From positions 2,232,001-2,296,000 of the forward strand of contig OZ004607.1 of assembly GCA_963924565.1 (NCBI GenBank): a stretch of 64,000 nt of DNA, given 5' to 3'. Under the pieces are notes generated by a model. That model had not been told where the DNA came from. It was given only the letters and a program-made list of their open reading frames with translations, and made no database searches. The stretch comes from Ascidiella aspersa. Taxonomy: Eukaryota. Positions 13,843 through 59,200 of this stretch are shown one piece after another (the stretch's first letter is position 1; each line of letters opens with the position of its first letter). The position numbers were made by a program, and so were the translations under genes.

Positions 13843-14251
13843 ATGGACCAAGTTTCGAGTTTGCGGCAAGACAGGGGCGTCACAGTTCGCACCCTGGCCA
13901 CAATAAGAGCCCTACGGGCCACCGAGGCCAAACCGGCCCACGACCAACCACGATTTCCAGCCGGGGACGGTCAGGAAAAGCGATCAACTAGCTGCCAGCT
14001 GCGTGGAAGCCTCACACACCCAAGTGTTGACGCAAAGGTGTCGCTTCGAGCTTCTAATCGGCTTTGTCGCCGATTTCAATTAAGCCCTTTGATCCGCGGC
14101 GGATTAACGACGGCGCCGCGGCTCGCTGGCCCCTCCCACCCGAGCCCCCCTAGGCCGGGGGTGCTATGGGCCCTGTTCCTGGCCACCCTGGCACTCCTGG
14201 TGCTTCAAACCACGGCGAGCGCCAATAAGCTGCCGTTAGTCAGAACTCGAG
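13843..14251 (+). CDS. SEMA6: Semaphorin coding exon 1 (ATG, long N-terminal extension, signal peptide [21 protein letters not shown])
   Basis: ATG at 13843 (AAAATGG); hydrophobic core at aa 107-121 followed by A-S-A; donor G|GTATTT, phase 1, matches exon 2. Confidence 0.8.
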
Positions 14252-38200: not shown

Positions 38201-41200
38201 TTAACGCTGGTTTCCCAGGCTGGAAGGCGCTTATTTGCGGCCTAATTGTGGTCACACTTTGCAATTACAAAGTCGCTCTATTTTAACCGAGTTTGGTTCT
38301 AAATGTACGGAAACAAGTGCAACTCTATCCTTGTGATTTGTTAAGGTTGGCTTTACGCGCTTTGAACAACCTAATTTGTTGTGAGAAGTTCTTCACTGAG
38401 TCTAAAAACAGATTTTCGAGTCGCTTTTGTCGCAGTTTGTTTTTCAACATTGCGTTTCGGCGCCTAATTGATTCGCAAAGCGATTGTGCGATATTATCGC
38501 AATAATGTGCGGACAAGTGGGCCATTGTCACGCGTAACAAAGCCCCTCTGTTATTTGCCACTGTCCTGTTTACTTTCGAAAGTCCGAAGCAACAAATGCG
38601 CGCCAAAAACAGGCTGCATTCACACAACGGTTGGAGGCAGCGAAAACAAACGGTGCGCCGAATCGTGGTGAAAACAGGGGTGTAGTATAGCGGTGGTCGA
38701 TTATTTGACGCCGGAAGTTTAGTGTTTTGCTAGCGGCACGCGGCATACGCGATAAGGGCGCTGTTCGTGACAGAGCACAAAGCGACTTGCGAAAAATCGA
38801 CCCAGGATTTATATAAACAGGGAAGTTTAAACACGACACCCACTGTGACAAGCAGAGGTCAGATCAATAACAAGGCCACAAAGCTAGGAAACGGCGGGCC
38901 GACGTCACACTATGACGTCATAATGGGCGTCGCGCGACGTGGGAACTTTGCGGTGGTCTCGCGCCGACACGCGATGTGTTTTGGGAAGAAACAAGCGAAA
39001 AAACGCGGGCTTTTTGTGGTGTGATGTTAATGTGTCGGTTACAAACCTGACCTGGTTCCCAGATTGTTTGGTTGACCTCGTTTACAAAAAGAAAAAACCT
39101 CGATCCCATAATGAATTAAACCTGGCTTCCAAAACTATTCAGCCTGGCATCCAAAACTAATTCAACCTGGGCCCAAAACTATTCCACCTGGCACCCAAAA
39201 AACAATTTTCAACTGTCATACGTATAGACAGTATGACCCTTGCATAAAAATATATTCAGTAATCCAGAAATGTTTTACTTGTCAACCACAAGGAAAAGAT
39301 TAAAGCAAATGAACGAAAAATAGGAAGAAAGAAAAAAACTTCCGGTGTATATAAAAATATTGTCAGTATTTCACAGTTCACAGCATTCAAATAAAATGAC
39401 ATTTTATCAAGAGAAATTATTAGAAAAAACCTAACCAACGCTTTTCAACTTTTAGGAAATTTATTCGTGTTTTTCCGGTCGTTTGACTTTTACGCTTTGT
39501 CGCTGCTTCCTCTGATAAGACTGATAACTGCCGGGAATTCTTGCACGATTTTCTCCGCCCATTGTTTGTGACACGCGCGCCCATTGTCGCGTAATTAGGC
39601 GCCAGACTTTCTCCGCTAAGGATAAACTATTTAAAGCGCTTTAACGGTAAAAAATCGCTGCAATTAGATCATAACACCAAAGCTTGTTTACTTTTAACTT
39701 GGTTGGAACAATGATGTGTTGTTATGTCACAATACACCTTTCTTAGAAATTTTTTTTTACCGGTTCTGTTATGGTTTAAATCGTCCTAAGCTGACTTGAA
39801 ACGTTAAGTTTCAAAGTCAAGACTTTCAAGATTTGTTTTTTCGGCGAAACATAAATCGTGATTAAATCGATTACGTCATGTCTTGACGTCATTTCACACA
39901 TTCTTAGAGTTATTTTCAGTATTTAACGGATCTAGTGCTTTTAAGCTGTTTAATTTGCACCAAAGCTGATTTACCTTTTTGTGGAAACATCAGTAATGTT
40001 GTCCCCAGCTGTTAACAACAGCTCACCTTACTATGTTAATATAAAACTCCTGTAAGATAAACAGATCGAATGAATGGGCATAAGAAGGTGTTAAGCTAAC
40101 CATTTGATTACATTTCCACTTTCATTTGAATTTTTCATATGACAGCAACTTCCAGCCAAACGTCTCAAATATACAGGCTATTAAACTAAAAGGACTGAAT
40201 CTTAACGTCTTCGTTTCTTATTTGACAGAAACTACGTATACATGATCAACGCAAGCTCAACAGGGTCGGGAGAAATCAGCTACATCAGAAAACTAAGATG
40301 GAAGTCACACGACAACATCCGAAAGAGCTGCATCCAGATGAGAAACGAACCGGTTAGTAGTAGAAGTTGTTGTTGTGAGTTTTTGTCCGCAGTTTAAAAC
40401 CTTTGGTTTTTTTGCTCGTTTTATGGCTGTTTTAGTGCCCTTTTATGGGACACGATCACATTAATCTTAATCTGGGAAAAAAGTCCAATATTATGTAGAA
40501 AAGCAAAACACAATAATGTTGAATTCAAATTACTAACCGCGTGGTCAGGTTTTGATGTTTGTCGATGTTTTTAAGCTTTTAGCGACTTTTTGCATTATAA
40601 TTGGTCATATAGCAGAGCTGAGTTGTTACGAATTAAAGTAACATTTTCTTGTTTGTACGAATTCCGCAAAGTTTGTCGTATGATAAAAAAGCACGTTTAA
40701 GGTTTTTAGTGTGTTGTGTTGTATTTCTGGTAATAGTTGAACGTTTTCCACCAAAATAAGATTTTATATTGTTGTACCTAAAAGTAAGGCTTATTAATTC
40801 TTTATCAAATCCTAACGATAAAGTCTGACCGAATATTGTAATAAATCCAAATCGCTTAAAACCCATCTCAACTGCGCTTTCGATTTCAAAAGTCAACAAC
40901 TCCGATCACGGTTCACTGAGCGCACATCAATAGGACCCTCACGTTTGATGGTCACTTTCCGGTTGGCTTTAATCACAAATTACGTCAGGCTCTGAAGTCG
41001 ATTTCCGAGTGTTTTCAACATTGGTTTAGACGCATGGGCGGCTATTTTAAGGTGTCATTGCTGGCAATTGTAAGATATACTGGCCTTAGTATAATTTCAA
41101 AATACCTAGAGTTGGTATTGTCACATAAACTTTTAGCAAAACTTATTCTATTGATATCCAATATTGTGTGTAAAATTTAGATATCTATGCTTTTCGGTAG

Positions 41201-44200
41201 CGTTAAGGTTTTTATGTATTTTATTTTTTTAGTCCAACTGCAATAACTACATTCGTATCGTGGAAATATTGGACAACGGCAAGCTTTACATTTGCGGGAC
41301 GAACGCCTACAACCCGAAGTGCAGATTGTACCTGGTAAGATTTGCAAAATAATACGGTTTTCTAAACTTTTTTTCAGAAGGTTATGAATTACTTCGAATT
41401 CACATGATTTAAATGTTGATTTGGGTTGAAAACGTCAATTACAGCTAGTTAAAAAATATAAAAAAAACAACCTAGATTTCCTAAAATGAATATTGCCAAA
41501 CTAACTAAAAATAACTAATAAACCTATGCTTTGGTTTGCAAAAATTACAAAACCATTGTACTCTTACACTCACAGTTATTTTTGTTTTAATTTTACCACT
41601 TTGCTTCAAATCCGTTTTAAGCCAGATAATTTATTTTATTTTATAGCGCCACCAGCTGGAATCGGGTCCAGGTCCGGACAGCTCACTGGCCGACACCCCC
41701 TTTGTAGGTGAAAGGTCATGCGAGGATACATGTGGGTGTCCCAGGATTCCAACGACAAGCAGCGCCCATCTTTACACCAACACGTGTAAGTGGAGGAAGG
41801 TTGCGATTTATAACGTTTAAGCTTCGTATGTGTTTCCACAACAGAATCTTGCCCTCCAACAGAACACGTAATACGCACGATAAAAGTCCCTGATTTTTTT
41901 TTAACTTAAAAAGCGCACCGCTTCGAACAACAAAGCTGATATTTGTAGCGGTGCGCTCTCCTAAGTTATAACTATCGTTTAAGTTTAAGCTTATGCCCTG
42001 GCACTATTTGAATGGCTTGTAGTTAACCATTTGGCAAATTTTATCCGACAACCGTGTAAAAATGTCAAATTCTGTTTGAGTCAAGGTAAAATTTGGACAA
42101 TTTTTTAAATCTCTTTCGGTGAAAACATATATACGCGTAAGGCAAAATACTGGGCAAGGCTCGTATAAATTTTATTGCGCTCAACAAGGCGGTTTTACAC
42201 CTGGTTTACGTTGAAATTTTGCTCATCAGCGTATCGACTGTGAACGCCCCTGCTTATAAAATCGAAATTATTCCCGGTAAAGCCGTTCCTTCCCAACCAA
42301 AACCGCAGCCTCGACCGGCAACAGCTGTTGTCACATTGCGGCCAAACCACGGGCGGCATCTGCCTTGTGATCTTAGAGCGGATGCCTCATCCACCTTCGC
42401 ACATCGGGGACCGCAATTCCAATCGGCGGGAATTTGATGACACGTCGCCCGCAGAATTTCGCGACCTACCTCATCTAAATCGCCCGCTCCGTTGGCTTAA
42501 TTGACGCTGCGGGACATTATAGAGAGGTTTAGGAGCGCCCGCGGCCTAGTTTTACTCAATTCCGTTTAAGTCTTTAGTGGCTTTTTTGTGGAATTTTTTG
42601 CGCGATTTCTCGCGGTTACAAGTACGTCGAAATGACGCCTATTGAATTCTATTTATCAGCCAAGTCTAGTGAACGAAGTACATTTCTTTCTTTTCTTAAA
42701 GTTGGCTTAAAGTTAAAGTTTCTCGATGAAGTGTGCATGTCTTTAAGGTGCAACGTTTTGACCGCAAAAACGAGAAAGATCCTAAACGCAGCTTAACCCT
42801 CAAGTTTATTTCGGCTACTCTTATCGTCAACTTGGGCAAAAATTAGATTTTAGGAAATAACCAACTGTCGCTTCATAGTTTGCTCTGAAACATATTTGGG
42901 GACGAGACGTTTGGAGAAATGTGATAAACTTCTTCCTGAAAGTCTTGTCAAACCCTTAAACGCATCTTCACACACTTTATTTTATCGTCAACCACTCAAT
43001 TGCTCCTTTTATTCCACAGCTGCTGGATACCTCCTCTTCTCAGGAGTAACTCCCGATTATCTCGGCAAGAAGTCCTTCCTCATGAGATCAGTCGACTACC
43101 TTCAGAGCGTTGAGGGCGTTTTAAACAGTAAGTTAGCTTTTTTAATCTTGTTCAAGAGTCACGGAAAGCGTATGTATTGATCGATAAATTATTGCTTAAT
43201 ATTTTTTTTCATTTTCTACACGTTTAGCTAAAATCTCCAACTAGTATACTCAACAGTTGTGTTCGTTAAATATTTTTTTTTTCAAGTTTCTTGATAGAAA
43301 TTGAACCTAATTGTTTTAATCGTTTATAGTATGATAAAAATTCTGACAGATTTTTTAATAATTTCCCTTATTTTTTACTTTTAGCCCCAACCTTCATTAA
43401 ACTGATCGAATACGAAGACAAGGTTTATCTGTTCTTTCGTGAAACTGCTTCAAGAGTCGAGACTGGGACAGATTCACTGGTGAGTGGTCAACGTTATTTA
43501 AATAGGTTTTGTGTTAAAACTTTAAAGCTGAATGTTCAAACTTTGAAAAAAATCTCATTTCTTAAAGAAAAATTTACATACTTTATTATATTAGGCATAT
43601 CAAAATTGTTTCTGACAAGCTAACCGAAGTAGATCATTATATTTTGGTAAATTTTCTTGAAAAATGAAAGCGTTAAGAAGCTTCTTCCAATAAATTGTTA
43701 CCACCAAGCGACCAAAAATATATAATTATTATCTTACTCAATTTCTTCCGTAAAAAAAAAACGAACAAGCAATCTTAAGTTTTTTAACAAATTTGTTCCC
43801 ACCTTTTAAAAAAACGTGGAACGCATGCTGCTTTAAGCTCAGCTAGCCTAAAAACTTAAAAAATACAAAACTTGAAAAGTATTTCTACAATCACCATCTT
43901 TATACAACAATTACTTCTATGAAACTTAAAAAATATTTTTGCCATTGCTCTCTAGCGCTTCTACGCTCGCGTGGCTCAAGTGTGCAAGGATGACATGGGG
44001 GGAAACACCATACTCGAGAACAAGTGGACAACCTTCATCAAGGCTCGTTTGGAATGTTCGATCCCAGGTTCCCACTATACAGAGGGTTTCACCTTTAACA
44101 ACCTCACCTCGGTCAGCGATATCACACAAGTGCAGATGGCAGACGGAAGTTCAATGGATGTCGTGTTTGCAACATTCACAACACCTTGGTAAGTTTAGAT

Positions 44201-47200
44201 TTTGTTATTTTTTGTTTGCTAGCTTGACATTTTTCTGGTGGTTTTAGCTAACTTCTACTTTTAGTGGTATGTTTTGTTTGTTAATGGTAGTTTAGCTAAC
44301 ATTACCCTGTTCGTATAACTGTTGCAAAATGTATCTTAATCCAAGACGAAATTAAATTACACAGTTATCTATAATTTCAAAAAATGTTGCTTTAATTATA
44401 ACTAGTAAATACTGAAAACAGAATTAAAAGTATTTTTTGCTAAAATTATTGATTTTACCAAAATGAAACTATTATGCGCAGTAAAACATTAAAAAAGCTA
44501 TTTATTAATGTTTGGAATATTTATTATGAGATACAAAGGCTCCTTTAAGTAAGTGTTTTCAAATAACAACGTCCCTTCGAACAACAGTTGATTGTTTCCT
44601 CCACAGGGGTTTAGACGGCGTGTCTATGTCATCTGTCTGTATGTTCTCGATGAGGGAGAGCATACAAACCTTGTTCGACACCGGATCCTTCCTTGGAAAA
44701 GCGGAATTTGAATCAAAGTGAGTTAAAACTTAAATCCTAGTATCACTAAAGTAACCTTATTGGTGAAGGATTTGTAGCTTGCTTGCAAAATTCCAATGTT
44801 GAAATAATCTAAAATAGTGATGTGTTTGGTAGTATAAGCAGTACATGCTAAAATACCGACACGAGCGTTTAATACTTATAAAAACCTACTATGCAAACAT
44901 TAATTTTACAGTCAAAATTTTTTCACTTGTAACATCGACAAAAGACAAATTCTAAGCAAATCTATTATTCCACAAATAATGAAAACTTTTTCGAGTTTAT
45001 TAAAGTTGTGTTTACAATTTTTTTAGGCCGGATTCCAACAACGGTTATTCTGGTCGTAGTGAGACAACCAAAGCAGTTCCAATTCCCGACGACTTTACAC
45101 CAAGTCCTCGTCCTGGGAGGTGGGTCGGTGTGTTTTTGATGGTTTAAGAAATAAAATACCACTTCAAACAACATTTTTGGGGTCACATCCTTCAGCGTCA
45201 TATTTTAGTATTATCAAATCGGAACCGATAACCGATACAAAAGAATATCGGTACTCGTCCAGTCGTCCGATACTAGAGTGGTCTCGATATGATTCTAAGT
45301 TAGTTTTGCATTACACCCATGTTTTGCGATCTAACTCACAGTTTTCTATCTTTAAACGCAAATTTTGGAGAATAATTATATTAAAATGGAAGATGAATAT
45401 GATTCATAGCGCAACAGACAATTTCCGACCTACACCCTAGAAATCATTATTAATGCGTTTATCATTTTTTTTTATCTTTTTTTAAAATCCCACAATTTAA
45501 ACTGACCTATATAATGCCGCGCTAAATAATTCATTCCTACACACTACATTCCATAAAGTTGCCCAACAGAGGTAAAAACGCCACGCTCCAGAAATTACAA
45601 AAACACTTTAAATATCGTAAATATTTACTCAGTCGCACAATACCTGTGTTAAGTCGGTAAACGTGCCCTGTGTTTTATGTACCTTGTTAACCTCATAATC
45701 CCAAAAGCCGTCGCGGCCACCTACTGTAAAATCGTCGACCGTCTGGCCCCGAGTAACCTTTAGACTTTGTCGTGACGATGCGAACTCTGGTAACCTTTGA
45801 AAGCACCGAACTGCCTTGCATTTTTAAAACGCAATAGTTGGATGTTGCATACTCACAAAATATAAAAAAACATGATTTTTATCTAAAGAATATATTCCCT
45901 GCCAACCCTGGTCCATACAAACCAAAAAAGTTGTTAGGGGTCCTCGAAAAAAGTTTTAATAACCTTCTTAATCTATCACATCACATAAATTTGCACCGCA
46001 TTTCAACTTAACGCACATTTTTGACTAAAATAAAATTGGTTGTTACATGTATGATTAATTAGTTAAATGCTGTAATGTTTTGATTTAGTTCTTAGTCACA
46101 TTAACTGAACATAATACAATTTTGTATAAAAACCTCGTTCTACTCGACCTTTTTGGCTTTAAAAAGCTACATTACACATACATAATAAACCAAATTATAA
46201 GCTACATTACAGATGCATAATGAACCAAATTATAAGCTACATTACAGATGCATAATGAACCAAATTATAAGCTACATTACAGATGCATAATGAACCAAAT
46301 TAATTGCCGTGTTGTTATTCCAGCTGCCACAGGCAAAAGAGTGACGAAGAGTTGGCCTTTATCAAGAAATACCCGCTCATGTACTCGTCAGTAAAGCCAA
46401 TCTACAACCAACCAATCTTCACAAGCGAGTCAGAGTGAGTTGCTTCAACTTGATTTATTGCCACAAACCGATTTAACATTGTACAGTGGCGACAACTAGG
46501 CCACATTATGACGGGCGATTTCGCGGCGATCAGCGAAATCATTTTGACGTCATTCATGAAAGCTAATGTTTTGCTTACGTAATGGGTGCTAAATATGTCA
46601 TCGAGTTTCAAATTGGTGGCGTTCTTTATCGGATTGTAGCGTTGGTTAATCATTTAAAAGCATGACTGTAGGAGATTTAAAAGTTATTAATATTACTAGC
46701 TTAAAATATTTAATGTTCTATTGTAATTAGTTTAAATAACTTTTAGGTTAGGTTTCTTACTTTAATCGCCATAAAGCCATACACCTAAATTTTACAAAAC
46801 ATGCTACAGTGTTATATTTTACAGTGAACACCGTTTACCACATTTTTAATATGACCTGTTTTTTCTTCAGTATTCGCGTTACTCAAATAGCGCTGGATAA
46901 TAACGCCGGGTACCACAACAAGAAGGTGCTGTACCTTGGAACTGAAAAGGGATCCATTCTTAGAGTGAGGACTCGTTTCGAGTACACAGAGGTAAGTTTG
47001 AGGAGGTATAAACATAACATACAGGATAAGCAGTAATACTAAAGATTAATGTAAATCACATTTCAGATATTTGTAACAGGGTTGCCACTAAGTGTTTGGA
47101 ATGTCTTTTATTGATTTGTGTATTCCAGAGTTTTGGAAAACCCTAAAAAAAGCCCCGAAAGGGATACTATGTCACATATAAAACAAACACTAAGTGCATT

Positions 47201-50200
47201 GGAACACAATGGTTAGAGGTGTAATAAGACGTAATAAGAATATAAAAGTTTTTTATTAAAAAAGTTCACAGAATAATACCTACTTCTGTATGGGCTTTTA
47301 TATTGCTACTATGTATTGTACAACTACAACCTCCATTCATTATCTTACATTTATTCTAAACTTTCACAAAATGTTGCTCGTTCTTCTGTATTGGCTGAGC
47401 TATTCGTACTACGACTGAGTGCATTCTTAACATTTTTTCTTACTTTAGGGTCCCAAGGCGATTTTGCTGGAGGAGATGGCATTTAGCGATTCCGATAAAT
47501 GCACGAATCTCGCGTGCACGGTTCGATCCCTGCATGTGACCAGACCGGCCGTCGGGAAACCAAAAGCGCGTAAATCGATGCCTGGAGGTCCTAACGTGTT
47601 TGTGGCATTCACTGACCGCATTACCATGGTCCCTGTGGCTGTGTGCATTTCATACGGAAAGGAAGAGTAAGTTTTGCTTGTTTAATATATACTTTAATAT
47701 TTGAGTTGACAGCTGAACTTTTAACACGGTCCGTAAATGTAAAGCATTTGGGCGTAATAGCTTAATGTTGCAGATCCGAAGCCTGTATGTAGTATTGTTT
47801 AAATGTTCCATTGAAACAATGCGCATTATTGACGTCATAATAGTTGGAGGTAGTAACTAAACTCCGGAGTTATTAAGTTACACAAAAGTGCGGGTAAAAT
47901 TGTATGTTTCGAATCTAAAAATTATGTGGTACTGTTTAACGACAAATGTATTAAGATCATGACAAGCTTTCGCACAATTGTGCTTTATCAGGTTAAAGTA
48001 GAAATGAATTAAACAAATACAGTTACCAACAAATAATTCTATGTTTGGGATATTTCTTTAGTATCCGCTTTGCTGAAATTTAACAATAATTATTCCCCAA
48101 CCTTTATAAATTCTGCACTGCCAAGCGTTAATGCTTTATTGCAAAGGACATTAAATTAAAACTTTTGTTTCAGTTGTTGCAACGCCGACCCAGATTGTGG
48201 TTGGGGAAGACAAGGATGTCAGCAAAGAAACGCAAGCAACTAGTAAGTTCTAACAAATCGTTGAGTATAGGCTCCCTTTAGACAATAGTATTACAGAGAC
48301 TTGCAGTCCAACTACAGTAATTTAAATAAAAAATATAAAGTAAAGATGTTCGGATATCATATGATCTTTTATATTTTTATAGGTTTAAAACAGTAACGTA
48401 CCTAAATACAAAAAAATGGAAGATCGCTTAAAGAGACGCTTTATAATTTCTATACACTGACACAAAAAACTGACAATGCTATGATACGTGTTTCAACAAT
48501 ATTGTAAAACAGCACAAACACATTGATAAATAGACTGATAAATTGAAACATACATAATTTCATAAACACACTGTGTATTCTGTGATTCAGCCCCTTTGAA
48601 CTGTACTTGTAGGCTAATAATTGTACGCTTATTTAAAATTAAAAGTACCCCATTTTCTATGCCATGTTGGCAGCAAGTAACGTTTACTTTTACCCCTCCA
48701 CAGCAATTCGCTTCCAGCCATCAACAACCTTGCTTTAGTTCCAAGCAAATGTGAGGTTCCACCAACACCACCTGGTAAGTGAAACCACCACTTGCTGTCG
48801 TAAAGCCTTCTGTCGTGGATCTGCCTTTGCAAGGCCAATAACTAGCACAGAATTGCAGTGTTCGAACTGCTAGCCGTCTTTATGTACCTAGCAACTCGAA
48901 AACTGTATTTTTGCACTGGTTTTTGGCTTTGTTAAGCACATCCACGATGTTATGTTGCTTTTTGTAAGGCCTATTGGTCGCTTTGCTTTTGAATGTGTAG
49001 AATCAGAACGCAGGTCTAGGATGTTGATCTAAATCTTTTCCGATCCCTGCGTTCGTTTTGTGCTATTTAGAAGCAGAGCGACCGGGAAAAAATGCTGTAT
49101 CTGCTTTTTGTTGTAAATGTCATTTATGTAAGAAGTTTTCTAAACCCACATTATGCCAGGTTTACGCGAGCAACAACATGGCCATAATTTGTCTCTCAAA
49201 ATGGCCTTCAGTCTAAAGTGGAATGTCCCCTTTTTTAAAAAAGGTTTTTTTTAATAGCAATATTAAACTAAGCCATTGAATTGCTATTTGAAAATGTCGC
49301 TTTAACCCTGGCATAATGTATAGGAGCACCAAAATCAAAGGCTGACATTTTGTGAAATGTAACAACTCTTACTTGAAAATATTTATGAACATAGATACAC
49401 GAACTCTATATTGTTTTAACCTAGCTAAAATGTTTCATGTTGATTCGCTATGTAGCGCCTTAACCTAACTCCCAAATAGCTTGTATTTATTGGTGAAAAT
49501 CCTAAATATCTTCAAGCATGTGTGTAATAAATGTATAGTGGTGCCTTTGCAAGCTGTTCTAGGTTTATTTGGTGAATGCATGAATCAAATCGACTGTAAT
49601 CTCGTCATACGTCATCAACTTTGCATGGTGCATGGTCACGTAATACTAATGACGTCACACTATGGTGTTCAAAAGTACCAAGATTGTTTGTGTAGCGTTT
49701 TAAATGTTTTAATTTTAAAGGAATACGTCATAATGGGTATTGTTCTAATAACATTGAATAGTTTTTTTGTTATGGTTTAAACTAAGAATAATACCATATA
49801 AAAATATTAAAAAATCGAAAAAAGATATAAAACTACAAAAAACAAAATATTTTTAAAAGCAAAAATTCACAAACATATTGAAAAATAAAAAAAAATGGAA
49901 AATTATTTTAAAACAAAATTAAAGAAAACAAATATTGAATAAAAAAAGGCATAAAGTCAGCTTATGATTGATAAAAAAGAAATAAATTGCATAAAAGTAT
50001 GTAATCTATTAGGAAATTGTGCATTCAGCGGTGTGTTGCGGTGGTAGAGTCGGAAAAACACAATTTGTGTTTCGTCATCGCTGTTGTGACGTAATATCAC
50101 GTAACAATCGTCTACATCACGTACTCAGAATTAGCGTTCCAACAACTTAAGCAACACACCGCTGACTGTATATTCGCTAAGGTTTTGTACAAAAAACGCG

Positions 50201-53200
50201 CGCGTTTCATAAAAAAGCGATTGTTTTACATCATTGTCATCACAAATAACAATGTCGCGCGAAAAATCGCTTTTCGCCATTTTCATTCTTTTAAGTTTTC
50301 GTCTTTTTTTCGCTCCGTCGCCGATTTTCGGTTGTGACCTTGAAAAACGGAAGCAGCTGAGTTTGCGACCTTTGTGACCCGGTGCCGCTGCCTAACCAAA
50401 AGCACCAGGTATGACGTAACAATGTGAGTTGCTAACAACAAACCTTGCACATCAAACACAACCCATATTTGGTGTAGTTTTCTTAGGCCTAGATATTGCA
50501 AGGCAGAATCAGGAAATGGCAGCTATAAGAAAGTTAACAAAGCAAGATAAGTTTTCAGTTTTTAAGCTCTTAAAATCAATAATATTTGCAGAATATTAAC
50601 TTCCGAGATTAAGAATATTTGTATCTGGAAAGCGAAAGATCTCTCAGTGAGTTTAGATAGCAATTATTTAAAGCAACATGTTTGCCAGTTGTAAGCTATT
50701 TTGCATATTCCAGAAGCGTTATATTTTTGTGCTTCCAATGCATGTTTTGGGTTTAAATTTTCCGCGGTGAAGTTGGTGAAAGCGCATGTGACCAGTCAAG
50801 TCAGCCAAGGTTACAAAAAACCTACAAAAGAACTATTTGAAGGTAAAAGAGCCGTATTTTTGCCAGGTTTGCATTCTAGTAGCCGCAACTACTGTATTTA
50901 TACCGAGTATACTTTTTGCATGTTTTGTAGAAACAGAATTTTCATTTTCCGATTCTGCTTTGCACATTATTAATCCGACTAATATCACCTTTTTAGTTCC
51001 TTACCATTTTTACAATCATAAACAAAACCCTAATAACTCTATAATAACTACAACTTGTGTTTTTATACAAACTTGAAATTCCGAATCGTTTTTTCACGCG
51101 CGCCTTTTTCTCTTCCAGTTATCAACTGTCCCAAGACGCCTCGCTGCGCCGACGTGGCCAAGCGTGACGCCAACCATAGTGACGTCACACAATCGACGAC
51201 GCCCCGGGTCGGATGCGCCCCAAAGTCCCCAGGACGCAAGAGACCCCAAGTGGACAGAAGAGCGACTCCAAGAAAGGATAGGACTCAGAAAGATGACCCG
51301 GGAGCCTCTCATAGTTGCCAGGATGCTTCCTCCAGAGAGGAGAAGACTGCTGTGATGCAGAGCGACGAGATGCTAATGGGGCTCTTTCGGGAGCGTATCC
51401 TTCCTCTTGTGTCCTCCTCCTTCCACGAGACCCTTCACTCACTGCCGGAGCAGTTCTCGGAGCGTCAGCGCCACAACTTGATGTACCAGTTGCAGGAAGC
51501 TTTGGCAATGACCACAAACCTTGTTCTCCGTAATCACAGGCAGGAAAGCTACCTGGGGACTTGCACAGTGAGCAGCTTGACACATGCCTACCCTCTTCTG
51601 ATGCGCGAAGTCGCTTTATGGCACGAGAAAGCCTTGGAAAGTATGGTGGCTGATGATATGATGAACGCTTGTTGGACTCGATCCACCAGCAGTGGATCTC
51701 CCTGCGTTGGAACGGTCTCCATCAGCATTCCACTTGCTCCTACTCTATGGGAGCCCCTCAAGAACTTGATGAGCCGCGATTTCGACGCCATTTGTGACGT
51801 CATACCGGGCGCGAGCGCTCAGGCGTCCAACTGCAGCCACCTGGGCGCCGTGGCTTCGTGCAAAGACGGACGATTCTCCAACTCGGCCAGCTGCCAGCCT
51901 AAGGAGTGTCAGTTCGTTGGGCTTCCAATGGACGTGATGGCCTTCTTCAGGCACGTGAACGATTGCCAGAAGTTCCTTAAACCAGGAGTCCAGCCGCTTT
52001 GGAAAGACGTTAACGTTACCTTGAGCCCAGTGAACGCCATACGCGGCCATTTGGAACTTTACCTGAGCCGCGACCATCCATTTCTCATACGTTACTCGCC
52101 TGTACCTGAGAAAGTGAAGATCTCTTTCCATTACAAAGCCGTTCGCGATTGCGACCTTAACAACGCGTTGTGTAATGGCAAGAGGAAGGGATGTAACCCG
52201 GATTTGGAGGACACAATGAACACCTGGTTTACAAAGGTTGTGGGAAGCCTTAAGTACAAAAAACCGAAGAAGTGCTCGCGTCAGCTCGCAAAGTACAAAC
52301 AACAGCTTCAGCAGAGCGACAGTCAACGCTCACAGATGACCGGGCAGACCTCCAGGATCAGAAACAGGGGGCAAGTATCAAGATCAGCATCCAGAAGCAG
52401 AAGACAGGCTTATGACGCTCGCGGGAGGCGGCAAACCTTCAGAAGACCCAACCAGGTTCATCCATCGATGCCTAAAAAATGCAGGTACATCAAGAAGTCC
52501 GCTCCTCGCTTAAAGAGCCGTCTCTGGCCGGATCTTGTCCTCAGAGCACAAAATAGAGGAGGAGAGTACAGAGGAGGAGAATACTCTGACCTTCCGCAAA
52601 GAATCAACTTCTACTCTCTGGAACACCTCCGGGACTTTTTCGACAACAGATGCTCAGTCGCTCCTCCACATCCAAGTTTCGCGACCTTCGGAAAAGCTGT
52701 TCGAAGGAAGAAGATAAAGAGTGAAGTGAGGGTTTTCGTGTCGCGCGACATGCCCTTTGTCATTGAGAGGATTCCCACTCGAAACCGCATCACTTTCAAG
52801 TATTTCACGCACAACGTGTGAAACTTTTAAACACTGAAACTCGTTTTTTCGTTTTTTGTTTTTCAAAAAAACAACTTTGCCCCTGGTAGTTTGCGCTTTT
52901 TTCACTTTCCAACTTGTTTTGGGAAGTTTTTCTTCGAAAACGCTAATTAGTTACTCATTTTTGAACAAGGTATTTAACTGAGATTAATATTATCTAAAAA
53001 TTAACAGTAAAACGCATTTCAAACTTCCAGGGGCGAAGCTGCTTTGAATATTAAGAGCAACATTTACCAACCAACTCATTCTTTTTCCTCTGTTATTTAT
53101 TTATTCTTTTTCTCTTTTTGTCGTTTTCTCTTTCTGTCAAGTTCCTGTCTTAAAGCGCCTTATGAAAGAAAAAAAGCCGCTAGTGTCTTCTCGTTTTTTT

Positions 53201-56200
53201 CTTCTCTTCCGCCGATAAATGTCCAATATATATTCACTCTATATATATGTTCTGCCACTGTGACGTCATAAAGTATTGCGGACTACTTGTTTTTGTTTGA
53301 ATTCAAACAAATACAAAAGAGGCCGACGATTTTTCTTTCTACCTCATCAAAATCAAAACAAGGACAGACACCACATCACTTTAGCTTAAATTATTGGAAA
53401 ATTTAATCATTTAAAATGAAGGATTACCCATAATGTTGAATTCAGTATAAAATGTAAAATTACATAAATTAAAGCAATTCATAAATTTATCAGTAATATT
53501 GGGGCTTAGAAAATACAAAAACTAGTCCCAGTTTGGAATTGAAACAAACTCAAATTTTTCTCCTAAATATTATAATGCTATAAATAAAACTATTTATGAA
53601 TTAGTCATTATTGGATCTTTGAAACATATCTCTATAAAATTTTCCAAAATCCTAACCTTCGTCAGAATAGGTTTGGGAAAATATAGAGATTTTGAATTTA
53701 CAGATCGGGATTTAAAAAACATTATATTGGACAAATATCGTAAGAAGTTATAAATCGCTTTCTGTCCTTTATATTACACCTTGCAGCACACTCTGCCTTT
53801 TTTACGATCACATTTTAACCTAGATATTATTTTACTTGCCAAACACATATTCTTACCTCGTTTTTAGTCATTCAAGGTCTGATAAAGCATTTGTAGCAAA
53901 AAATGTCTACTTTTTTAACAAACACGTTGCTGAACTGATTTTTTACACTGAAACCTTGAACATGCAGTACGAGGCCAATTTATTGCAGTTCTACATTATA
54001 TGAATTATCGTAATCGTTACTATTGTGTAGTGTTATCTCATACCTTTATCATGTCGTTCTGCATTTTGTTCTTATCATCGTTTTTAGCGTTATTCCGAGG
54101 GTCGCTAGTTCGATTCCCGGCCCTTACTTGCATCACACTTTATGACGTTTGCCAAACTTCTTCACCACCGCGGCGGTTGCCATGGTTACGCAGCATCGTG
54201 CGTCCACGTGCCTGTAGGGGATTCCCCTCCGCGAGTTATTATTATTGTTAGGTGTTGTGTTTTTTTCTCTTTTTACGTTGTTTTCATGCAAACGCGTGGT
54301 TTAATAAATCGCGAACGAGCTCAATTTTTTTGATGGTGTTTTATTAGCAAAGTTCAAGTTGAGTAAATAATATTATAGTGTTGTTGCCTGGAGAAAATGG
54401 CCAATTTCAATTAAAAGCGGCTGATTTTTTGTAAGAACTTAGGTAAGAAAATGGCAAACAGCTACTTACTGAAACGGGCATAAAACAAAACCAAATACCA
54501 ACATGGTTTAAGAGTTTTCACAATAAATCAAACTTCAATTAAAGAAAGTAATTAGGAAATGGCATTATCATTCTTATCACAATCAATTCTAAGATACATT
54601 TAATGCGAAATAGGACTTTTACAATCCCGTTACACTTTCTGATTGTCACTGTTTCAATGCTTTAAATATCTGACCTTTTCTCTTTAGATCAAGATTCAAA
54701 AGTGTGCAACAATGATTATAAAGCTCGTAAAATAATGGTTGTCAGAAAAACATGTTTTAGTAACATTTGTCTTTTTAAACCTTATCTTTTCATGTTTGGT
54801 CTAGCGAGTTCTCTGTTTGTCTCCATTTATAATCTATTTTCGTAATACATACACTTTTGGCATTTTGGGCAAAAAGTAGATTTACAATGCACGACGCCAT
54901 TTATCGGTAGTAATTGCAAAACCATTGTGTTTCCTTTAGATATATCCGATACTTTTATTCCGATACCAAGACCCGATATTTCAAACAAAAACCCGATACC
55001 AAGTTACGTCATTAATATGTCCTAACGAGCAATATAACTTAAATTGAAACGTTCAAAAGTCTTTGGTTATTAAAAAGGCAAAATTGGCTTTAGCGTTAAG
55101 AAGTTTAATTTTTATCCAATTAAGTTCATTCATGTTCACCTTTCAAGCTAAAAATCGCTGCGTTAGATCGCAAATCAATCTGGAATTTTGTATTAATTTG
55201 GTATCTTATCGGCGCCGATAACACAGAGTATCGGACGATACTACCACTTGGTATCGGGTATCGGCTCCGTTTCGATATTAATTCGGTATCGGATCGGCAC
55301 CAATTTCTCCGAAGTATCGGACGATAACTACCACTTAGCATCGACTGTCAATCCTCTACTATCGGACATCCTTAGTTTCTATACACGAAATCATTTCCAT
55401 TTCACAACTTACCAATAAAAAAACTGTCTACGAGTTTATAGGCGCTTAACGCCATGTAAAATAATTGCCCCTATTAAATTAAGGCTTGAGTTATTAAATT
55501 TTATCGCCATATTCAGCAATCGTCTCTTCGGCTTCGAGTAAGCCTAAACCAATTTCAAGTAAAGTCAAACCACCACCCGAAGTGGGTCAAAGTAAGTTGG
55601 TTTGTCGCTGAATCACAACTGCTAAGTGGCTTATTGATTTGAGTGGAGCTTTTCGCAATTCACCAGAGTCTTTAAATAAAATGCTAATTTCATTTTGTTG
55701 TTCGTTGCTGTGCGAATTTGGTTTGAAAACCTACATTGTTAGTTTCAGATAAAATATCGCCTTATCATTTTTACTAGCAACCGTTAACGTAACTAAGTTG
55801 GTAATATGATGTTATCAACAATCCATGTAAAGATTTTTTTTACATTTTTCTAAGTAATTAAATGTTTATTTTAAAGTTTAAAAAGCAACTGATCAAAACT
55901 AATGTGGGTAAAATTTAGCCAATTTGAGTTATGTTTTATAACAAACTTGTACAATCACATGGCATGAAGGTATTGCATGTTTTAGTAATTTTCCTTATTA
56001 GTAACTGTAGTTGGATGCCTATGTATTAAATATTAAATGAAGAAACCTAATCGTTTTTGCAACATTTTTAATTAAATTGCAAAAAAAAACTTTTTATAGA
56101 AGTTAGCATTTTTAATTATTTTCGTAAACTAATTATTCAATATTGAACGCCACCTAAAATGTCGGTCAAATTAACCCTCGGGCGTCGCAACCATATTGCG

Positions 56201-59200
56201 TATCCATGAATTGTAATGCAACAAGTTCAAGTGACCTAAAATTAAATTAGTTCAAGCGGTTCGCACAACCGTTGCTGAGCAACCATCTATACTCCCCTCC
56301 AAAACCTGCTTTTTTCTTCTTGCAGACGAGGAGGGCTCGACGCAGAGCCTAGCAACTGGATCCAGCAGCACTCTCGTGCTCGTGGTGGCTTGCGTCCTTA
56401 TGCTTCTACTCGGGATGGCTTTTGGTGCGCTTCTGATGCATTGCAGACAAAAGAGCAGAGGAGAAATGAGGTGAGATCAGGCATAAAATTTGCTGCCCGT
56501 GATATTTGCAGGCAAACTGAGCTCAAGTTTGCAATCCGTGATAGACACAGGCAACGCGTACATGAAGTGTTTGTTACAGCTCGATTTTATCAAGATTAAA
56601 TATAATTATTGTAATAACCCTAAACTTAATTATAAAAGCTAAAATTAAAATGTGGGTTTGGCACAATTTCACACCTAACTAGTGTTGCAATACCCAACAA
56701 TTTACAAAACCTGAATAATAAGAGTTTTGTTTCAAGGCATAATATATCAGCGTACGAGTCGAGCTTTTCAAAGGATCAAATCAGTTTTGGCCAGACCGCC
56801 ATTTGTATTTATTCCATTTGTACTCAATCTCTGTTCCTTGCTATTTGGCATAAACCAAGGTACCGCTGATCAAATGTGCCAAGCCTATAAACTGCGCTTA
56901 GCAAACAATTGGGTGAATTCCAGCAGTTAATTACAATCGTACGCACCAAAAACTAATCGACTCCCTGGATAAAAAAATGTTGAGTTTCTATGCTAAAAAA
57001 ATGCATTATCTCCACTATAGATGTCCAAAAATATCACATCGGAGTCGATACCCGATACCAACTGGAAGTATTATTACTTTCGATACTAGGGTGGTATCGG
57101 TGCCGATCCGATACCGAATTAATAAAGGAATTTCAGCCATAATTTGCGATATACAATATAGTTTACATTAAAAGGGTGATGGATTTATCAAAACATAGTA
57201 TAGGTTAACATTTGGAGGTAACTAAACGTCTTTGACGCCAAAGCAATTTTAATCTTATAACCTTAAAATGCCTCGAAACGTTTTGATTTTATTTAATTCG
57301 CTTGTTTAAGCATAACCAATTAATTATTTTTAAAACTCAATGTAATGTGCCTTAAAAGAGGAAAATTGAAACTAATTTGCCGTTTTTTTTTCAACATTGC
57401 TGCGCTTTCTAAGTGAGAAAAGCGGATTTCGGAAGTGGGTTTAAAAACGCATGTTGTTGTCGGCAAAGCTTTCTGAAAGATGAAAAACAATTCGAAATAA
57501 CAACGTTTTGTTTACATCGAGTTCCTTGCATCTTAAAGCTTGTCGTGTCGTTTAAAAACTGCTTTTTGTTGTTGAAAATATTGCCGAAAATGATCTTCTT
57601 TCTTCATAACGATAGCTTGATGTTTATTGCGTTTGCCTATTTGTTGTCGGGTATTCCCCCTGCTTACTATGCATGTCCGCTACAATGTTGTTATCAAATA
57701 AATAAGTATTACTATAATTATATCTCTTAAAAGGATTGATAAAGTAAAACAGTTGCGTTTAAGTCAGAATAACTCTTATATAAGTCAGCTATGAATAATA
57801 AAGTATTAGTATTCATTAAACGTTTAGTGTCATGTATATTTAAGTAACATATGTCAAGTGACGTATCGCTACACAAAATGGATTTAATGGATCAGTGCGA
57901 TGTTCGGCTATTTAATTTCTATTCGCAACGAAAGAGAAATGAGTAAGACCACAATGTCAAAAATCGCTTGATTTTTATAACAACTATACAAACCTTCCTG
58001 GCAGCAATAATTTGCGTTTTAAAACTGTTGTTATGTTCATTTTATTTAATATATTCTCAGTGTGGATGTTTTTTTGAACCAAGTAGAATAGTTAACATCA
58101 ATACAAAGCATAGCTTGAACTGTGTCTAAACTAAATCGAAACAACTAGTTTTATAACACTACAAAATTTAACAAACAAAATAAAGTACTTTTATAAGTGA
58201 GGTTTGGATATACCTCAGTCACATTAACTATTGAATATGCAGGAACATATCGAAAGCTCTCTTATCAAGATGATTTTGATCTACTTAAACTATTTGGCTT
58301 TCACATTTATTATCAAGCTGCATTGCAGATCCGCGCATAGTGCAAGTATATTGGTATCCATTACGGTATAACATTTAAATCAACTGAAGATGATACAAGT
58401 TCGTATCGAAACGTATTTATCAAGATGCTGTCGATCTTCTCCTTTTGGCTCTGAGATTCATTATTAAGCTATATTACAGATCCGTGCATAGTGTACCTCA
58501 TTCCATTTAAAATATTTAAAATATTTAAAAAAGCTGGTAGATTTGCGTGCTTGGCGCAATTAAGTAAATCTTTTTGCCGTTAGGTTGTTCACTTTTTTAT
58601 ATCCTTTTTTTATTTTTGCCTAAATTGATTTAAGTAAGACTAACTGATGATGATGATGCAAGTTTGTACCAAAATCGCCTTAAAATGTCGATTTCCTCTA
58701 ATTTTTCCGCTTTGGCATTCATTACTGGCTACTTTAAAAAAAAGCTACTTTACAGATCTGTGCATAGTATATGTAAAGCACTCTACTGGTGATTGTATAA
58801 TAGTGTTGAACTGCTCTTGGTGATTTTATAAGAAGAAAGATGAATTACAGTAGAAAAAGAGTGGCCTTCGCGTTTATCTCAACCTTATTTTACCGCACTG
58901 AAGATGGCATCAGCACTTGCCGAAACGTATGCAAATAAAAGAATGAATCTTTTATCATTTATTTGGGCCAATCTTTTTCTACTGAAGATTATGAACAGAT
59001 CCGTGTTACTGTTTTGTGTTCCAAAGTTGAACTAGTCTTCTGCTTTTATTCCAGGATGCCTGTCAAGGGAAGCTACCAGCCTGACAGCAGTTCCCGTGTC
59101 GAGTTAGAAACGCTCACTTCTCAAAACAAGTCGGGGACGAACACACAGATCGACTACCTCGAAATGGGACGGGGGCCTGGAAGGGTAGGAACTCTTATTT

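What the first reader, a model, noticed from the sequence alone, without database searches (positions are those of the whole stretch)
51119..52821. 1.7-kb in-frame alternative terminal exon would turn a class-6 transmembrane semaphorin into a secreted protein with an unrecognised 567-aa C-terminus
Seen: exon 15 ends in phase 1 and has two phase-1 acceptors downstream, 51119 (this exon) and 56326 (the TM exon). The stop-free frame starts only ~60 nt before the 51119 acceptor and runs 78 codons before its first Met (51355). It ends at TGA 52821, with ATTAAA (53468) and AATAAA (53583) downstream. The 567 aa contain 19 Cys, sequons NHS, NCS and NVT, and no TM segment, and match no domain I recognise. 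Established: class 6 semaphorins are Sema-PSI-TM proteins; the secreted classes (2, 3) carry an Ig domain. Inference: one locus makes both a 1156-aa membrane form and a 1302-aa secreted Sema-PSI-X form whose architecture fits no standard class.
Basis: partly seen in the sequence, partly recalled or inferred. Interest (0 to 1): 0.85.

Follow-up and report, generated by a model that had tools for sequence, protein, structure and literature searches.

The report
Tunicate semaphorin's alternative last exon
A sea-squirt semaphorin gene can end either in a membrane anchor or in one large extra exon that replaces the anchor with a 567-residue cysteine-rich module found only in tunicates; related species' transcripts show both endings, but nobody has studied the module.

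Summary
The exon runs 51119-52821, has a phase-1 acceptor that matches exon 15's phase-1 donor, and has 78 open codons before its first Met. It has 19 Cys, three sequons and no TM segment.

- The exon is single-copy in its 309-Mb tunicate genome.
- It lies in the same intron, between exon 15 and the TM exon, in a second ascidian, with the same acceptor phase.
- In Ciona, Clavelina, Styela and a pair of transcript contigs, two isoforms are identical up to the exon-15 homologue. One then continues into this module ("X") and the other into a TM helix and tail.
- Contigs of 4.2-5.1 kb carry Sema and X in one ORF, so spliced mRNAs of that form exist.

X has about 20 relatives among 1.84 billion representative proteins. 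All the named ones are tunicate, and X has no match in PDB or BFVD. The model shows a disordered linker, a helical region, two homologous alpha/beta units with 8 invariant Cys, and a polybasic linker.

"Secreted" is unproven, because a conserved N-terminal extension of about 115 aa precedes the hydrophobic signal.

The isoform is already modelled in RefSeq as an "uncharacterized protein" and is covered by a Pfam accession. It is therefore a new member of a database-known but unstudied kind.

The parts
13843..14259 (+). First coding region of the semaphorin gene. The only ATG is at 13843. A conserved N-terminal motif ([14 protein letters not shown]) is followed, about 115 aa later, by the hydrophobic signal-like segment ([20 protein letters not shown]).
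15062..48252 (+). Sema-domain and Cys-rich (PSI-like) exons shared by both isoforms. Exon-bearing open stretches lie near 15062-15322, 40206-40394, 41233-41349, 41647-41817, 42854-43177, 43330-43620, 43956-44189, 44530-44718, 45004-45144, 46304-46435, 46752-47033, 47449-47667 and 48160-48252.
   Evidence: These stretches are collinear with Ciona, Clavelina, Phallusia and Logan proteins and with the second ascidian locus L004. Pfam Sema matches exon 46752-47033 at 22.4 bits.
48704..48774 (+). Exon 15, the last shared exon ([23 protein letters not shown] plus G). Its donor G|gtaagt is in phase 1.
   Evidence: Its homologue in L004 (7074-7139) also ends in phase 1.
50379..50411 (+). The only conserved piece of the intron. 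It is a 33-nt element ending in a donor-like CACCAG|GTA (GT at 50410), about 100-350 nt downstream of CRE-, E2F- and YY1-like motifs. Its role is unknown; it could be an internal promoter with a non-coding first exon, or a splicing control element.
   Evidence: It matches L004 8539-8571 at 83% identity, blastn E 0.012, in the collinear position.
51119..52821 (+). Alternative terminal coding exon X. It encodes 567 aa counting the split codon, and stops at TGA 52819-52821.
   Evidence: Single copy in the genome. Homologues.
51119..51354 (+). Part of exon X upstream of its first Met: 78 codons forming a disordered, basic, Cys-bearing linker. The column of Cys32 (GCAPK) is Cys in all 8 sequences that align there. 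Three out-of-frame ATGs (51213, 51293, 51323) precede ATG 51355.
51319..51642 (+). Helical region of X (residues 67-174), modelled as three long helices.
   Evidence: AF2 model m272a548262e0. Only generic helical matches, best Z 6.0.
51706..52155 (+). Alpha/beta unit 1 of X (residues 196-345). It holds invariant Cys184, Cys195, Cys225 and Cys263 and near-invariant Cys247 (21 of 22), and the motifs AFFRH and EKVKISFHY.
52273..52470 (+). Helical, polybasic linker (residues 385-450). It has R-x-[KR]-R furin-like motifs at residues 425 and 434.
52477..52815 (+). Alpha/beta unit 2 of X (residues 453-565), homologous to unit 1.
   Evidence: hhalign probability 95%, E 2.7e-8. Model m35d0220000cc has pLDDT 86.8.
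52822..53588 (+). Candidate 3' UTR of the X isoform, with ATTAAA at 53468 and AATAAA at 53583. The cleavage site is not mapped.
   Evidence: The hexamers occur at chance density.
56326..56470 (+). TM exon of the membrane isoform ([48 protein letters not shown]), with a phase-1 acceptor.
   Evidence: A TM-like exon lies about 8.4 kb downstream of X in L004.
62579..63298 (+). Proline-rich cytoplasmic tail exon of the membrane isoform. This is an open stretch; its acceptor was not mapped.
   Evidence: It is homologous to the C-termini of Ciona 'semaphorin-6D-like isoform X3' and Clavelina isoform X4.

Best explanation
The 1.7-kb block is an alternative last exon of a tunicate class-1/6-type transmembrane semaphorin gene.

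Splicing choice:
- The donor of exon 15 (48774, phase 1) can join the proximal acceptor at 51119. The transcript then presumably ends at a poly(A) site inside the intron.
- Alternatively the same donor joins the distal acceptor at 56326, which leads into the TM exon and the cytoplasmic tail exons.
- The proximal choice gives a protein with the same Sema and Cys-rich ectodomain, no membrane helix and no cytoplasmic tail. It ends instead in a 567-aa tunicate-specific module, X.

Layout of X: a disordered Cys-bearing linker, a three-helix region, and two homologous alpha/beta units that carry 8 invariant cysteines. The units are separated by a polybasic linker that often holds furin-like sites.

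Shown here:
- the exon anatomy and its phase;
- single copy in the genome;
- the same position and phase in a second ascidian;
- both isoforms and spliced Sema-X mRNAs in other tunicates;
- the internal duplication in X, and the absence of any known domain or fold.

Inferred:
- that this species splices the same way;
- that the product leaves the cell;
- that X's conserved cysteines form disulfides;
- that X changes the range, oligomeric state or partners of the semaphorin signal, by removing reverse signalling through the tail and freeing the ligand from the membrane.
For: - Anatomy and phase.
- GC island.
- Single copy in the 309-Mb genome.
- No flanking repeats and no PHROGs or BFVD match.
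- Locus L004, from another ascidian, has the semaphorin exons, then the exon-15 homologue ending in phase 1. X follows behind a ...tttttcag| acceptor in phase 1, and a TM-like exon lies downstream.
- A profile search finds 20 relatives among 1.84e9 representatives. Four are 1090-1279 aa with Pfam Sema upstream of X. They include Ciona XP_018669347.2 and Clavelina XP_076799945.1, both 'isoform X1'.
- The Styela X1 model and a 1265-aa Phallusia entry also carry X.
- Two Logan contigs (4504 and 4216 nt) and one JGI contig (5073 nt) hold Sema+X as one ORF. They are therefore spliced transcripts.
- X and TM isoform pairs are 100% identical (Ciona 97%) up to one point just after the exon-15 homologue, in four species.
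- Only the TM isoforms have a late hydrophobic segment.
- The frame is coding upstream of the first Met. The alignment to Ciona starts at the second residue after the acceptor. The Cys32 column is Cys in 8 of 8 aligned sequences. Three out-of-frame ATGs precede ATG 51355.
Against:
- The poly(A) hexamers downstream are at chance density.
- RefSeq 'X' isoforms are computed models.
- A conserved donor-like element with promoter-like motifs lies inside the intron upstream of X. It leaves room for an additional X-only transcript.
- The hydrophobic signal-like segment sits about 115 aa from the only start codon, behind a conserved motif. The product may therefore be anchored rather than secreted.
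Confidence: 0.8

Rival explanations
1. X is an independent nested gene. A promoter inside the intron, near 50.1-50.3 kb, makes a non-coding first exon ending at the donor-like site 50409|50410, or the 51119 acceptor takes a trans-spliced leader. X would then be translated alone from ATG 51355.
For: - The only conserved piece of the intron ends in CACCAG|GTA in both ascidians and lies in the collinear position.
- CRE-, E2F- and YY1-like motifs lie just upstream of it in both species.
- The stop of the upstream ORF that starts at 51293 overlaps ATG 51355 as TGATG, which would allow re-initiation.
- From my own knowledge: tunicates trans-splice many mRNAs.
Against: - Spliced Sema-X mRNAs and isoform pairs exist in four or more relatives.
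- The 78 codons before the first Met are conserved as protein, including their cysteines.
- In the window, the frame that would run from the 50409 donor into X has a TAA five codons before that donor.
- An X-only product would lack a signal peptide yet carry 8 invariant cysteines.
- No annotated X-only protein was found, but those searches have low sensitivity.
Confidence: 0.08
2. The splicing is as proposed, but the X isoform is not secreted. The hydrophobic segment about 115 aa from the start acts as an uncleaved signal anchor. The X isoform would then be a type II membrane protein with Sema-PSI-X outside the cell, and the 'TM' isoform would span the membrane twice.
For: - The window's first coding stretch has a single ATG (13843).
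- A motif conserved in Ciona, Clavelina, Phallusia and a Logan transcript ([VD]E.[IV]..LR..RG.TV) precedes the hydrophobic segment.
- A conserved N-terminal part suggests a retained cytoplasmic tail.
Against: - The hydrophobic core is short, about 20 aa, and is followed by a signal-peptidase-like A-S-A|N.
- More distant relatives (P0029, P0030) have the hydrophobic segment at the very N-terminus, like an ordinary signal peptide.
- No topology predictor or experiment was available.
Confidence: 0.3
3. The ORF is a transposon, retroviral or viral remnant, or a chance open frame, that gene predictors merely string onto the semaphorin.
For: It is a long intronless ORF inside an intron with a base composition unlike its surroundings.
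Against: - It is single-copy in the genome with no terminal or inverted repeats.
- It has no Pfam, PHROGs or BFVD match.
- It is syntenic and open in about 20 diverged sequences.
- Transcript contigs join it to Sema exons.
Confidence: 0.01

Closest known systems
Predicted 'isoform X1' proteins of the orthologous tunicate loci: Ciona intestinalis LOC100176831 (XP_018669347.2), Clavelina lepadiformis LOC143445033 (XP_076799945.1), Styela clava LOC120346291, and the Phallusia mammillata UniProt entry named after LOC100176831
   Same: They share the Sema part, the same split point after the exon-15 homologue, and the same C-terminal X module. X is 33-45% identical over about 500 aa and keeps the same invariant cysteines. 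Sister isoforms carry a TM helix and a proline-rich tail.
   Different: They come from other species, and X evolves fast: the best match is only 45% identical. All are named 'uncharacterized'. None of the three literature searches turned up a paper on the X isoform; the two papers opened do not mention it.
Class 6 (vertebrate) and class 1 (invertebrate) transmembrane semaphorins
   Same: The distal isoform has Sema, a Cys-rich region, a TM helix and a proline-rich cytoplasmic tail, and no Ig domain. NCBI names the Ciona TM isoform 'semaphorin-6D-like'. The nearest non-tunicate hits include 'semaphorin-1A-like' of Lineus and Branchiostoma.
   Different: From my own knowledge, no class 1 or class 6 semaphorin is described with a large alternative C-terminal domain in place of the TM helix. 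There is also a conserved N-terminal extension before the signal segment. Pfam did not call a PSI domain in the proteins scanned.
Secreted semaphorins of classes 2 and 3 (Sema-PSI-Ig, plus a basic tail with furin sites in class 3)
   Same: Like them, the X isoform has a Sema ectodomain without a membrane helix. It has a polybasic stretch with R-x-[KR]-R motifs in the window and 14 of 21 homologues, which recalls the class 3 basic tail.
   Different: It has no Ig domain. X is about 490 aa of helical and alpha/beta structure unrelated to Ig. The soluble form arises by alternative splicing of a TM-type gene, not from a separate gene.
Membrane-versus-secreted switches by alternative last exon with intronic polyadenylation (for example immunoglobulin mu heavy chain)
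   Same: From my own knowledge, this has the same logic: shared upstream exons, a proximal terminal exon with its own stop, and distal exons that encode the membrane anchor.
   Different: Here the proximal exon adds a whole 567-aa multi-domain module rather than a short tail. Poly(A) site use was not observed.

Membership tests
Semaphorin (Sema-domain protein) | A Sema beta-propeller domain encoded upstream on the same strand | tested here: met
   The window's exons are collinear with proteins that carry Pfam Sema PF01403 at 71-106 bits. One window exon alone scores 22.4 bits against a cutoff of 23.7. The joined protein was not built.
Class 1/6 transmembrane semaphorin | A TM helix and cytoplasmic tail after Sema-PSI, with no Ig domain | tested here: met
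   The TM exon 56326-56470 has a hydrophobic core. The tail exon is homologous to the C-terminus of the Ciona 'semaphorin-6D-like isoform X3'. The Pfam scans of the tunicate X-form orthologues (P0004, P0005, P0009, P0020, P0026, P0028) returned only Sema and no Ig family; the TM-form proteins (P0024, P0025, P0027) were not scanned, and their precomputed Pfam field lists only PF01403.
Class 1/6 transmembrane semaphorin | A PSI domain after the Sema domain | tested here: inconclusive
   A Cys-rich stretch follows Sema (Ciona: CDRYPNAACCNFDPECGW). Pfam PSI was not reported at E<=0.01 (P0004, P0005, P0009, P0020) or E<=0.1 (P0026, P0028).
Tunicate Sema-X isoform (RefSeq 'isoform X1' models; precomputed Pfam PF26709.1) | The X module is homologous over its full length | tested here: met
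   BLASTP E values range from 1e-78 to 1e-133 against Phallusia, Ciona, Styela, Clavelina and Logan or ENA proteins. PF26709 is absent from the local Pfam copy, so its name and model could not be checked.
Tunicate Sema-X isoform (RefSeq 'isoform X1' models; precomputed Pfam PF26709.1) | X is joined in frame to the last shared exon, at the point where the TM isoform diverges | tested here: met
   Phase-1 donor and acceptor are present in the window and in L004. The divergence point lies right after the exon-15 homologue in four isoform pairs.
Tunicate Sema-X isoform (RefSeq 'isoform X1' models; precomputed Pfam PF26709.1) | The junction is present in RNA of this species | not testable with these tools
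Secreted semaphorins, classes 2/3 | An Ig domain after PSI | tested here: not met
   Exon X has no Pfam family. The models are helical and alpha/beta, not an Ig sandwich. No Ig family was reported for the homologues.
Transposon or viral ORF | Multiple copies, terminal repeats, or homology to transposase, RT or capsid proteins | tested here: not met
   Single copy. No repeats. No Pfam, PHROGs or BFVD hit.

The most novel reading that the evidence does not exclude
Tunicates have a semaphorin architecture of their own, outside classes 1-7 and V. One class-1/6-type gene switches, through an alternative last exon, between a membrane form capable of reverse signalling and a released Sema-PSI-X form. 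X would be a new extracellular fold: two duplicated disulfide-bonded alpha/beta units on a helical stalk. The X module would then set oligomer state, matrix retention or a new receptor, and furin-type cleavage in its polybasic linker would tune activity as in class 3. In addition, the conserved promoter-like and donor-like element in the intron could control the switch or give an X-only RNA.
Probability: 0.3. Interest if true: 0.65.

Novelty: new member of a known kind. Interest (0 to 1): 0.5.

Why it matters
Semaphorin classes are defined by what follows the Sema-PSI core, and the published classification has no place for this ending. Tunicates are the sister group of vertebrates. A tunicate-wide switch between a membrane and a probably released form of a class-1/6-type semaphorin would be a lineage-specific way of turning a contact cue into a diffusible or matrix-bound one. 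The released form would carry a roughly 500-aa module with no known fold. This is directly testable in Ciona embryos, where a gene annotated Sema6a is expressed in nerve cord and notochord (PMC11728170). I did not show that this gene is the same locus. For annotation, the result shows that the long intronic ORF is a genuine coding exon of the host gene and not a nested gene or a mobile element.

Tried and rejected

**Searches that found nothing useful**
- Pfam on exon X: no hit.
- ESM Atlas: no usable hit.
- PF26709 is not in the local Pfam copy and appears in no paper.
- A PDB sequence profile search gave only noise, E 0.079.
- Foldseek against PDB, with the full model and with unit 2: nothing at E<=1e-3. 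There were only weak hot-dog, START, Bet v1 and BamC-like rows.
- VIA-align wide search: best Z 6.0 (generic helices) and Z 5.5 (N-terminal domains of RNase H3 and RnlA, Vtc4). Both are below the tool's own noise guide of 7-8.
- BFVD viral library: none. PHROGs: none.
- Rfam on the intron: none.

**Analyses that were uninformative**
- dN/dS between L002, L003 and L004: there are only 2 differences per pair.
- A third word-based protein search, restricted to residues 96-400, returned only P0001. It therefore says nothing about X-only annotated proteins.
- MAFFT on full-length proteins misplaced the first residue of X. I replaced it with a local alignment.
- tblastx and blastn of the two introns against L004 found nothing except the 33-nt element.

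**Readings rejected**
- Transposon or viral remnant.
- Chance ORF.
- Nuclear protein. The basic stretches first suggested nuclear localisation signals, but the conserved cysteines and the Sema fusion argue for an extracellular role.

- The joined, spliced protein of this gene was not assembled or searched. Exons were searched one by one, by reference.
Full report

Yes. A stop-free frame runs from 51037 to 52818 and ends at TGA 52819-52821. A strong acceptor, cgcgcctttttctcttccag|TT, places an exon start at 51119. The codon frame begins at 51121, so the exon needs one base from the preceding exon (phase 1).

Exon 15 (48704-48774) encodes [23 protein letters not shown] and ends ...CCTG|gtaagt in phase 1. 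The TM exon acceptor at 56326 has the same phase.

The first in-frame ATG is at 51355, 78 codons into the exon. The exon has 19 Cys, three sequons and no hydrophobic segment. It is a GC island of 0.50-0.55 in an intron of about 0.33.

Such hexamers occur 2.3 times per kb in this window, so they prove nothing.

**2. What is the ORF not?**

- It is single-copy in its own 309-Mb genome.
- It has no flanking direct or inverted repeats.
- It hits no Pfam or PHROGs family.
- Its predicted structure matches nothing in the viral structure library.

A mobile-element or viral origin is therefore rejected.

**3. Relatives and synteny**

A word-based search found two stand-alone ORFs, P0001 and P0002, at 35-40% identity.

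Three JGI 'metagenome' contigs that encode P0001 were fetched. They are near-identical to one another, with 2 differences in 1565 nt. They are clearly animal DNA. In L004 the semaphorin exons lie upstream on the same strand and in the same order as in the window, and X follows them.

The L004 homologue of exon 15 ends ...ccc g|gtatgt in phase 1. X begins behind gtttttctttttcag| at 9746/9747, again in phase 1, and is open from the acceptor. An exon with a TM-like segment lies about 8.4 kb further on.

So two ascidians whose X modules are only 40% identical keep the exon in the same intron, with the same acceptor phase.

**4. Direct support for the Sema-X fusion**

A full HMMER profile search of 1.84 billion representatives gave only 20 relatives. 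Four of them are 1090-1279 aa and carry a Pfam Sema domain upstream of X.
- Two are RefSeq models: Ciona intestinalis XP_018669347.2 and Clavelina lepadiformis XP_076799945.1. Both are named 'uncharacterized protein ... isoform X1'.
- Two sit on Logan contigs of only 4504 and 4216 nt. In the window and in L004 the Sema part is split into a dozen or more exons over many kb. A 4-5 kb contig with one 1090-1101-aa ORF must therefore be a spliced transcript. This step is inference, but a strong one.

A search with the Sema part of the Ciona protein added more:
- the sister isoforms with a membrane helix: Ciona 'semaphorin-6D-like isoform X3', Clavelina X4 and Styela clava X3;
- the Styela X1 model and a 1265-aa Phallusia mammillata entry that carry X. 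The Phallusia entry is the best match to the window, 45% over 535 aa;
- a JGI contig pair, P0032 (X form, 5073-nt contig) and P0031 (TM form).

In all four pairs the two isoforms are identical up to a single point, and then one continues into X and the other into the TM segment. The identities are 768/768, 724/724, 653/653, and 737/759 for Ciona. That point lies directly after the homologue of exon 15 (IPSNCQKQPVV| in Ciona, against [12 protein letters not shown]| in the window). Only the TM isoforms have a late hydrophobic segment.

**5. Is the stretch before the first Met coding?**

Yes, for four reasons.
- The BLASTP alignment of the window's open stretch to the Ciona X1 protein starts at the second residue after the acceptor.
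- A local alignment shows the cysteines of this linker recurring in L004, Ciona and others.
- In the 22-sequence alignment, the column of Cys32 is Cys in all 8 sequences that reach it.
- Three out-of-frame ATGs (51213, 51293, 51323) precede ATG 51355. They would hamper translation of an X-only mRNA that started at or before the acceptor.

**6. What is X?**

AlphaFold2 on a 19-sequence alignment gave mean pLDDT 73.9. The layout is:
- residues 1-71: disordered;
- residues 67-174: three long helices;
- residues 196-345: an alpha/beta unit;
- roughly residues 385-450: a helical, then disordered, polybasic stretch;
- residues 453-565: a second alpha/beta unit.

The two units are homologous (hhalign probability 95%, E 2.7e-8). 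They share the pattern FF(R/x)..(N/C) ... V(S)..PF.I ... (K)I.F.(Y/F).

Eight cysteines are invariant or nearly so in 22 sequences: residues 184, 195, 225, 247, 263, 385, 454 and 511. Several more are mostly conserved. That suits a disulfide-bonded extracellular module, though this is inference.

R-x-[KR]-R motifs occur in the window (residues 425 and 434) and in 14 of the 21 homologues, most of them within the linker.

Unit 2 modelled alone reaches pLDDT 86.8. Neither Foldseek nor the Foldseek-independent aligner finds a convincing solved relative. There is no Foldseek hit at E<=1e-3, and the best Z values are 5.5-6.0, below the tool's stated background of 7-8. The weak rows (helix-grip/START-like, TBP-like N-terminal domains) are leads only.

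A Pfam accession, PF26709.1, is precomputed on X in three homologues. It is missing from the local Pfam copy, so I could not read its name.

**7. Most likely mechanism**

This is an alternative last exon. Exon 15 joins either 51119, followed by cleavage and polyadenylation inside the intron, or 56326, leading into the TM and tail exons.

The proximal choice removes the membrane helix and the proline-rich cytoplasmic tail, and adds X. I put 0.8 on this for the present species. The remaining doubt is that no RNA of this species could be inspected.

**8. Caveat on 'secreted'**

The window's first coding stretch has a single ATG (13843). About 115 residues lie between it and the hydrophobic segment [20 protein letters not shown]. 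Those residues start with a motif conserved in Ciona, Clavelina, Phallusia and a Logan transcript.

The segment may be a cleaved internal signal, since A-S-A|N follows it. It may instead be a signal anchor, in which case the X isoform would be a type II membrane protein. I rate secretion at roughly 0.55-0.7.

**9. Rival: a nested gene**

Only one piece of the exon 15-to-X intron is conserved between the two ascidians. It is a 33-nt element at 50379-50411, matching L004 8539-8571 at 83% (E 0.012) in the collinear position. It ends in CACCAG|GTA.

CRE-, E2F- and YY1-like motifs lie just upstream of it in both species. This could be an internal promoter with a non-coding first exon, or a splicing control element.

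In the window, the frame that would lead from this donor into X contains a TAA five codons before the donor. It cannot supply a start codon for X.

Given sections 4 and 5, a nested gene as the sole explanation gets 0.08. An additional X-only RNA is not excluded.

**10. Comparison with what is known, and novelty**

The distal isoform is a class-1/6-type semaphorin: Sema, a Cys-rich region, a TM helix and a tail, with no Ig domain. The proximal isoform fits no published class, because classes 2 and 3 carry an Ig domain.

The papers I opened mention Ciona Sema6a and Sema3a expression but no such isoform (PMC11728170; PMC10084454; searches).

Databases already hold it, however, as RefSeq 'isoform X1' models in three ascidians, a Phallusia entry and a Pfam accession. 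For this genome it is therefore a new member of a database-known but uncharacterised kind.

Notes from other agents on this genome also call it a tunicate, in agreement with the named homologues found here.

**11. Limits**

Exons were handled one by one, by reference.

Noticed in passing
window 50379-50411 (context 50040-50440); L004 8539-8571: This is the only conserved piece of the intron between exon 15 and exon X. It is 33 nt, 83% identical between two distant ascidians, and ends in a donor-like CACCAG|GTA. CRE-like (TGACGTAA), E2F-like (GCGCGAAA) and YY1-like (CGCCATTTT) motifs lie upstream of it in both species. It may be an internal promoter with a non-coding first exon, or a splicing control element.
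   Followed up: partly
window 13843-14259: The semaphorin starts with an extension of about 115 aa before its hydrophobic signal-like segment. The stretch has a single ATG and an N-terminal motif ([14 protein letters not shown]) conserved in Ciona, Clavelina, Phallusia and a Logan transcript. This is unusual for a semaphorin and bears on whether the segment is a cleaved signal or a type II anchor.
   Followed up: partly
window 51293-51357: An out-of-frame upstream ORF starting at ATG 51293 stops at TGA 51353-51355, overlapping the first in-frame ATG of exon X (51355) as TGATG. This is the layout of a termination-reinitiation site, but it may be coincidence.
   Followed up: no
window 50134-50286, minus strand: A 51-codon minus-strand ORF ([20 protein letters not shown]...) starts at the YY1-like motif in the promoter-like region of the intron. 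tblastx found no counterpart in L004.
   Followed up: partly
I did not examine them.
   Followed up: no
L002, L003, L004 (JGI contigs JGI24158J21664_10000405, JGI24021J15306_10003902, Ga0210059_1000536): Contigs filed under JGI metagenomes are host ascidian DNA that carries the orthologous semaphorin locus. The three differ by only 2 of 1565 nt across exon X, so they come from one species.
   Followed up: partly
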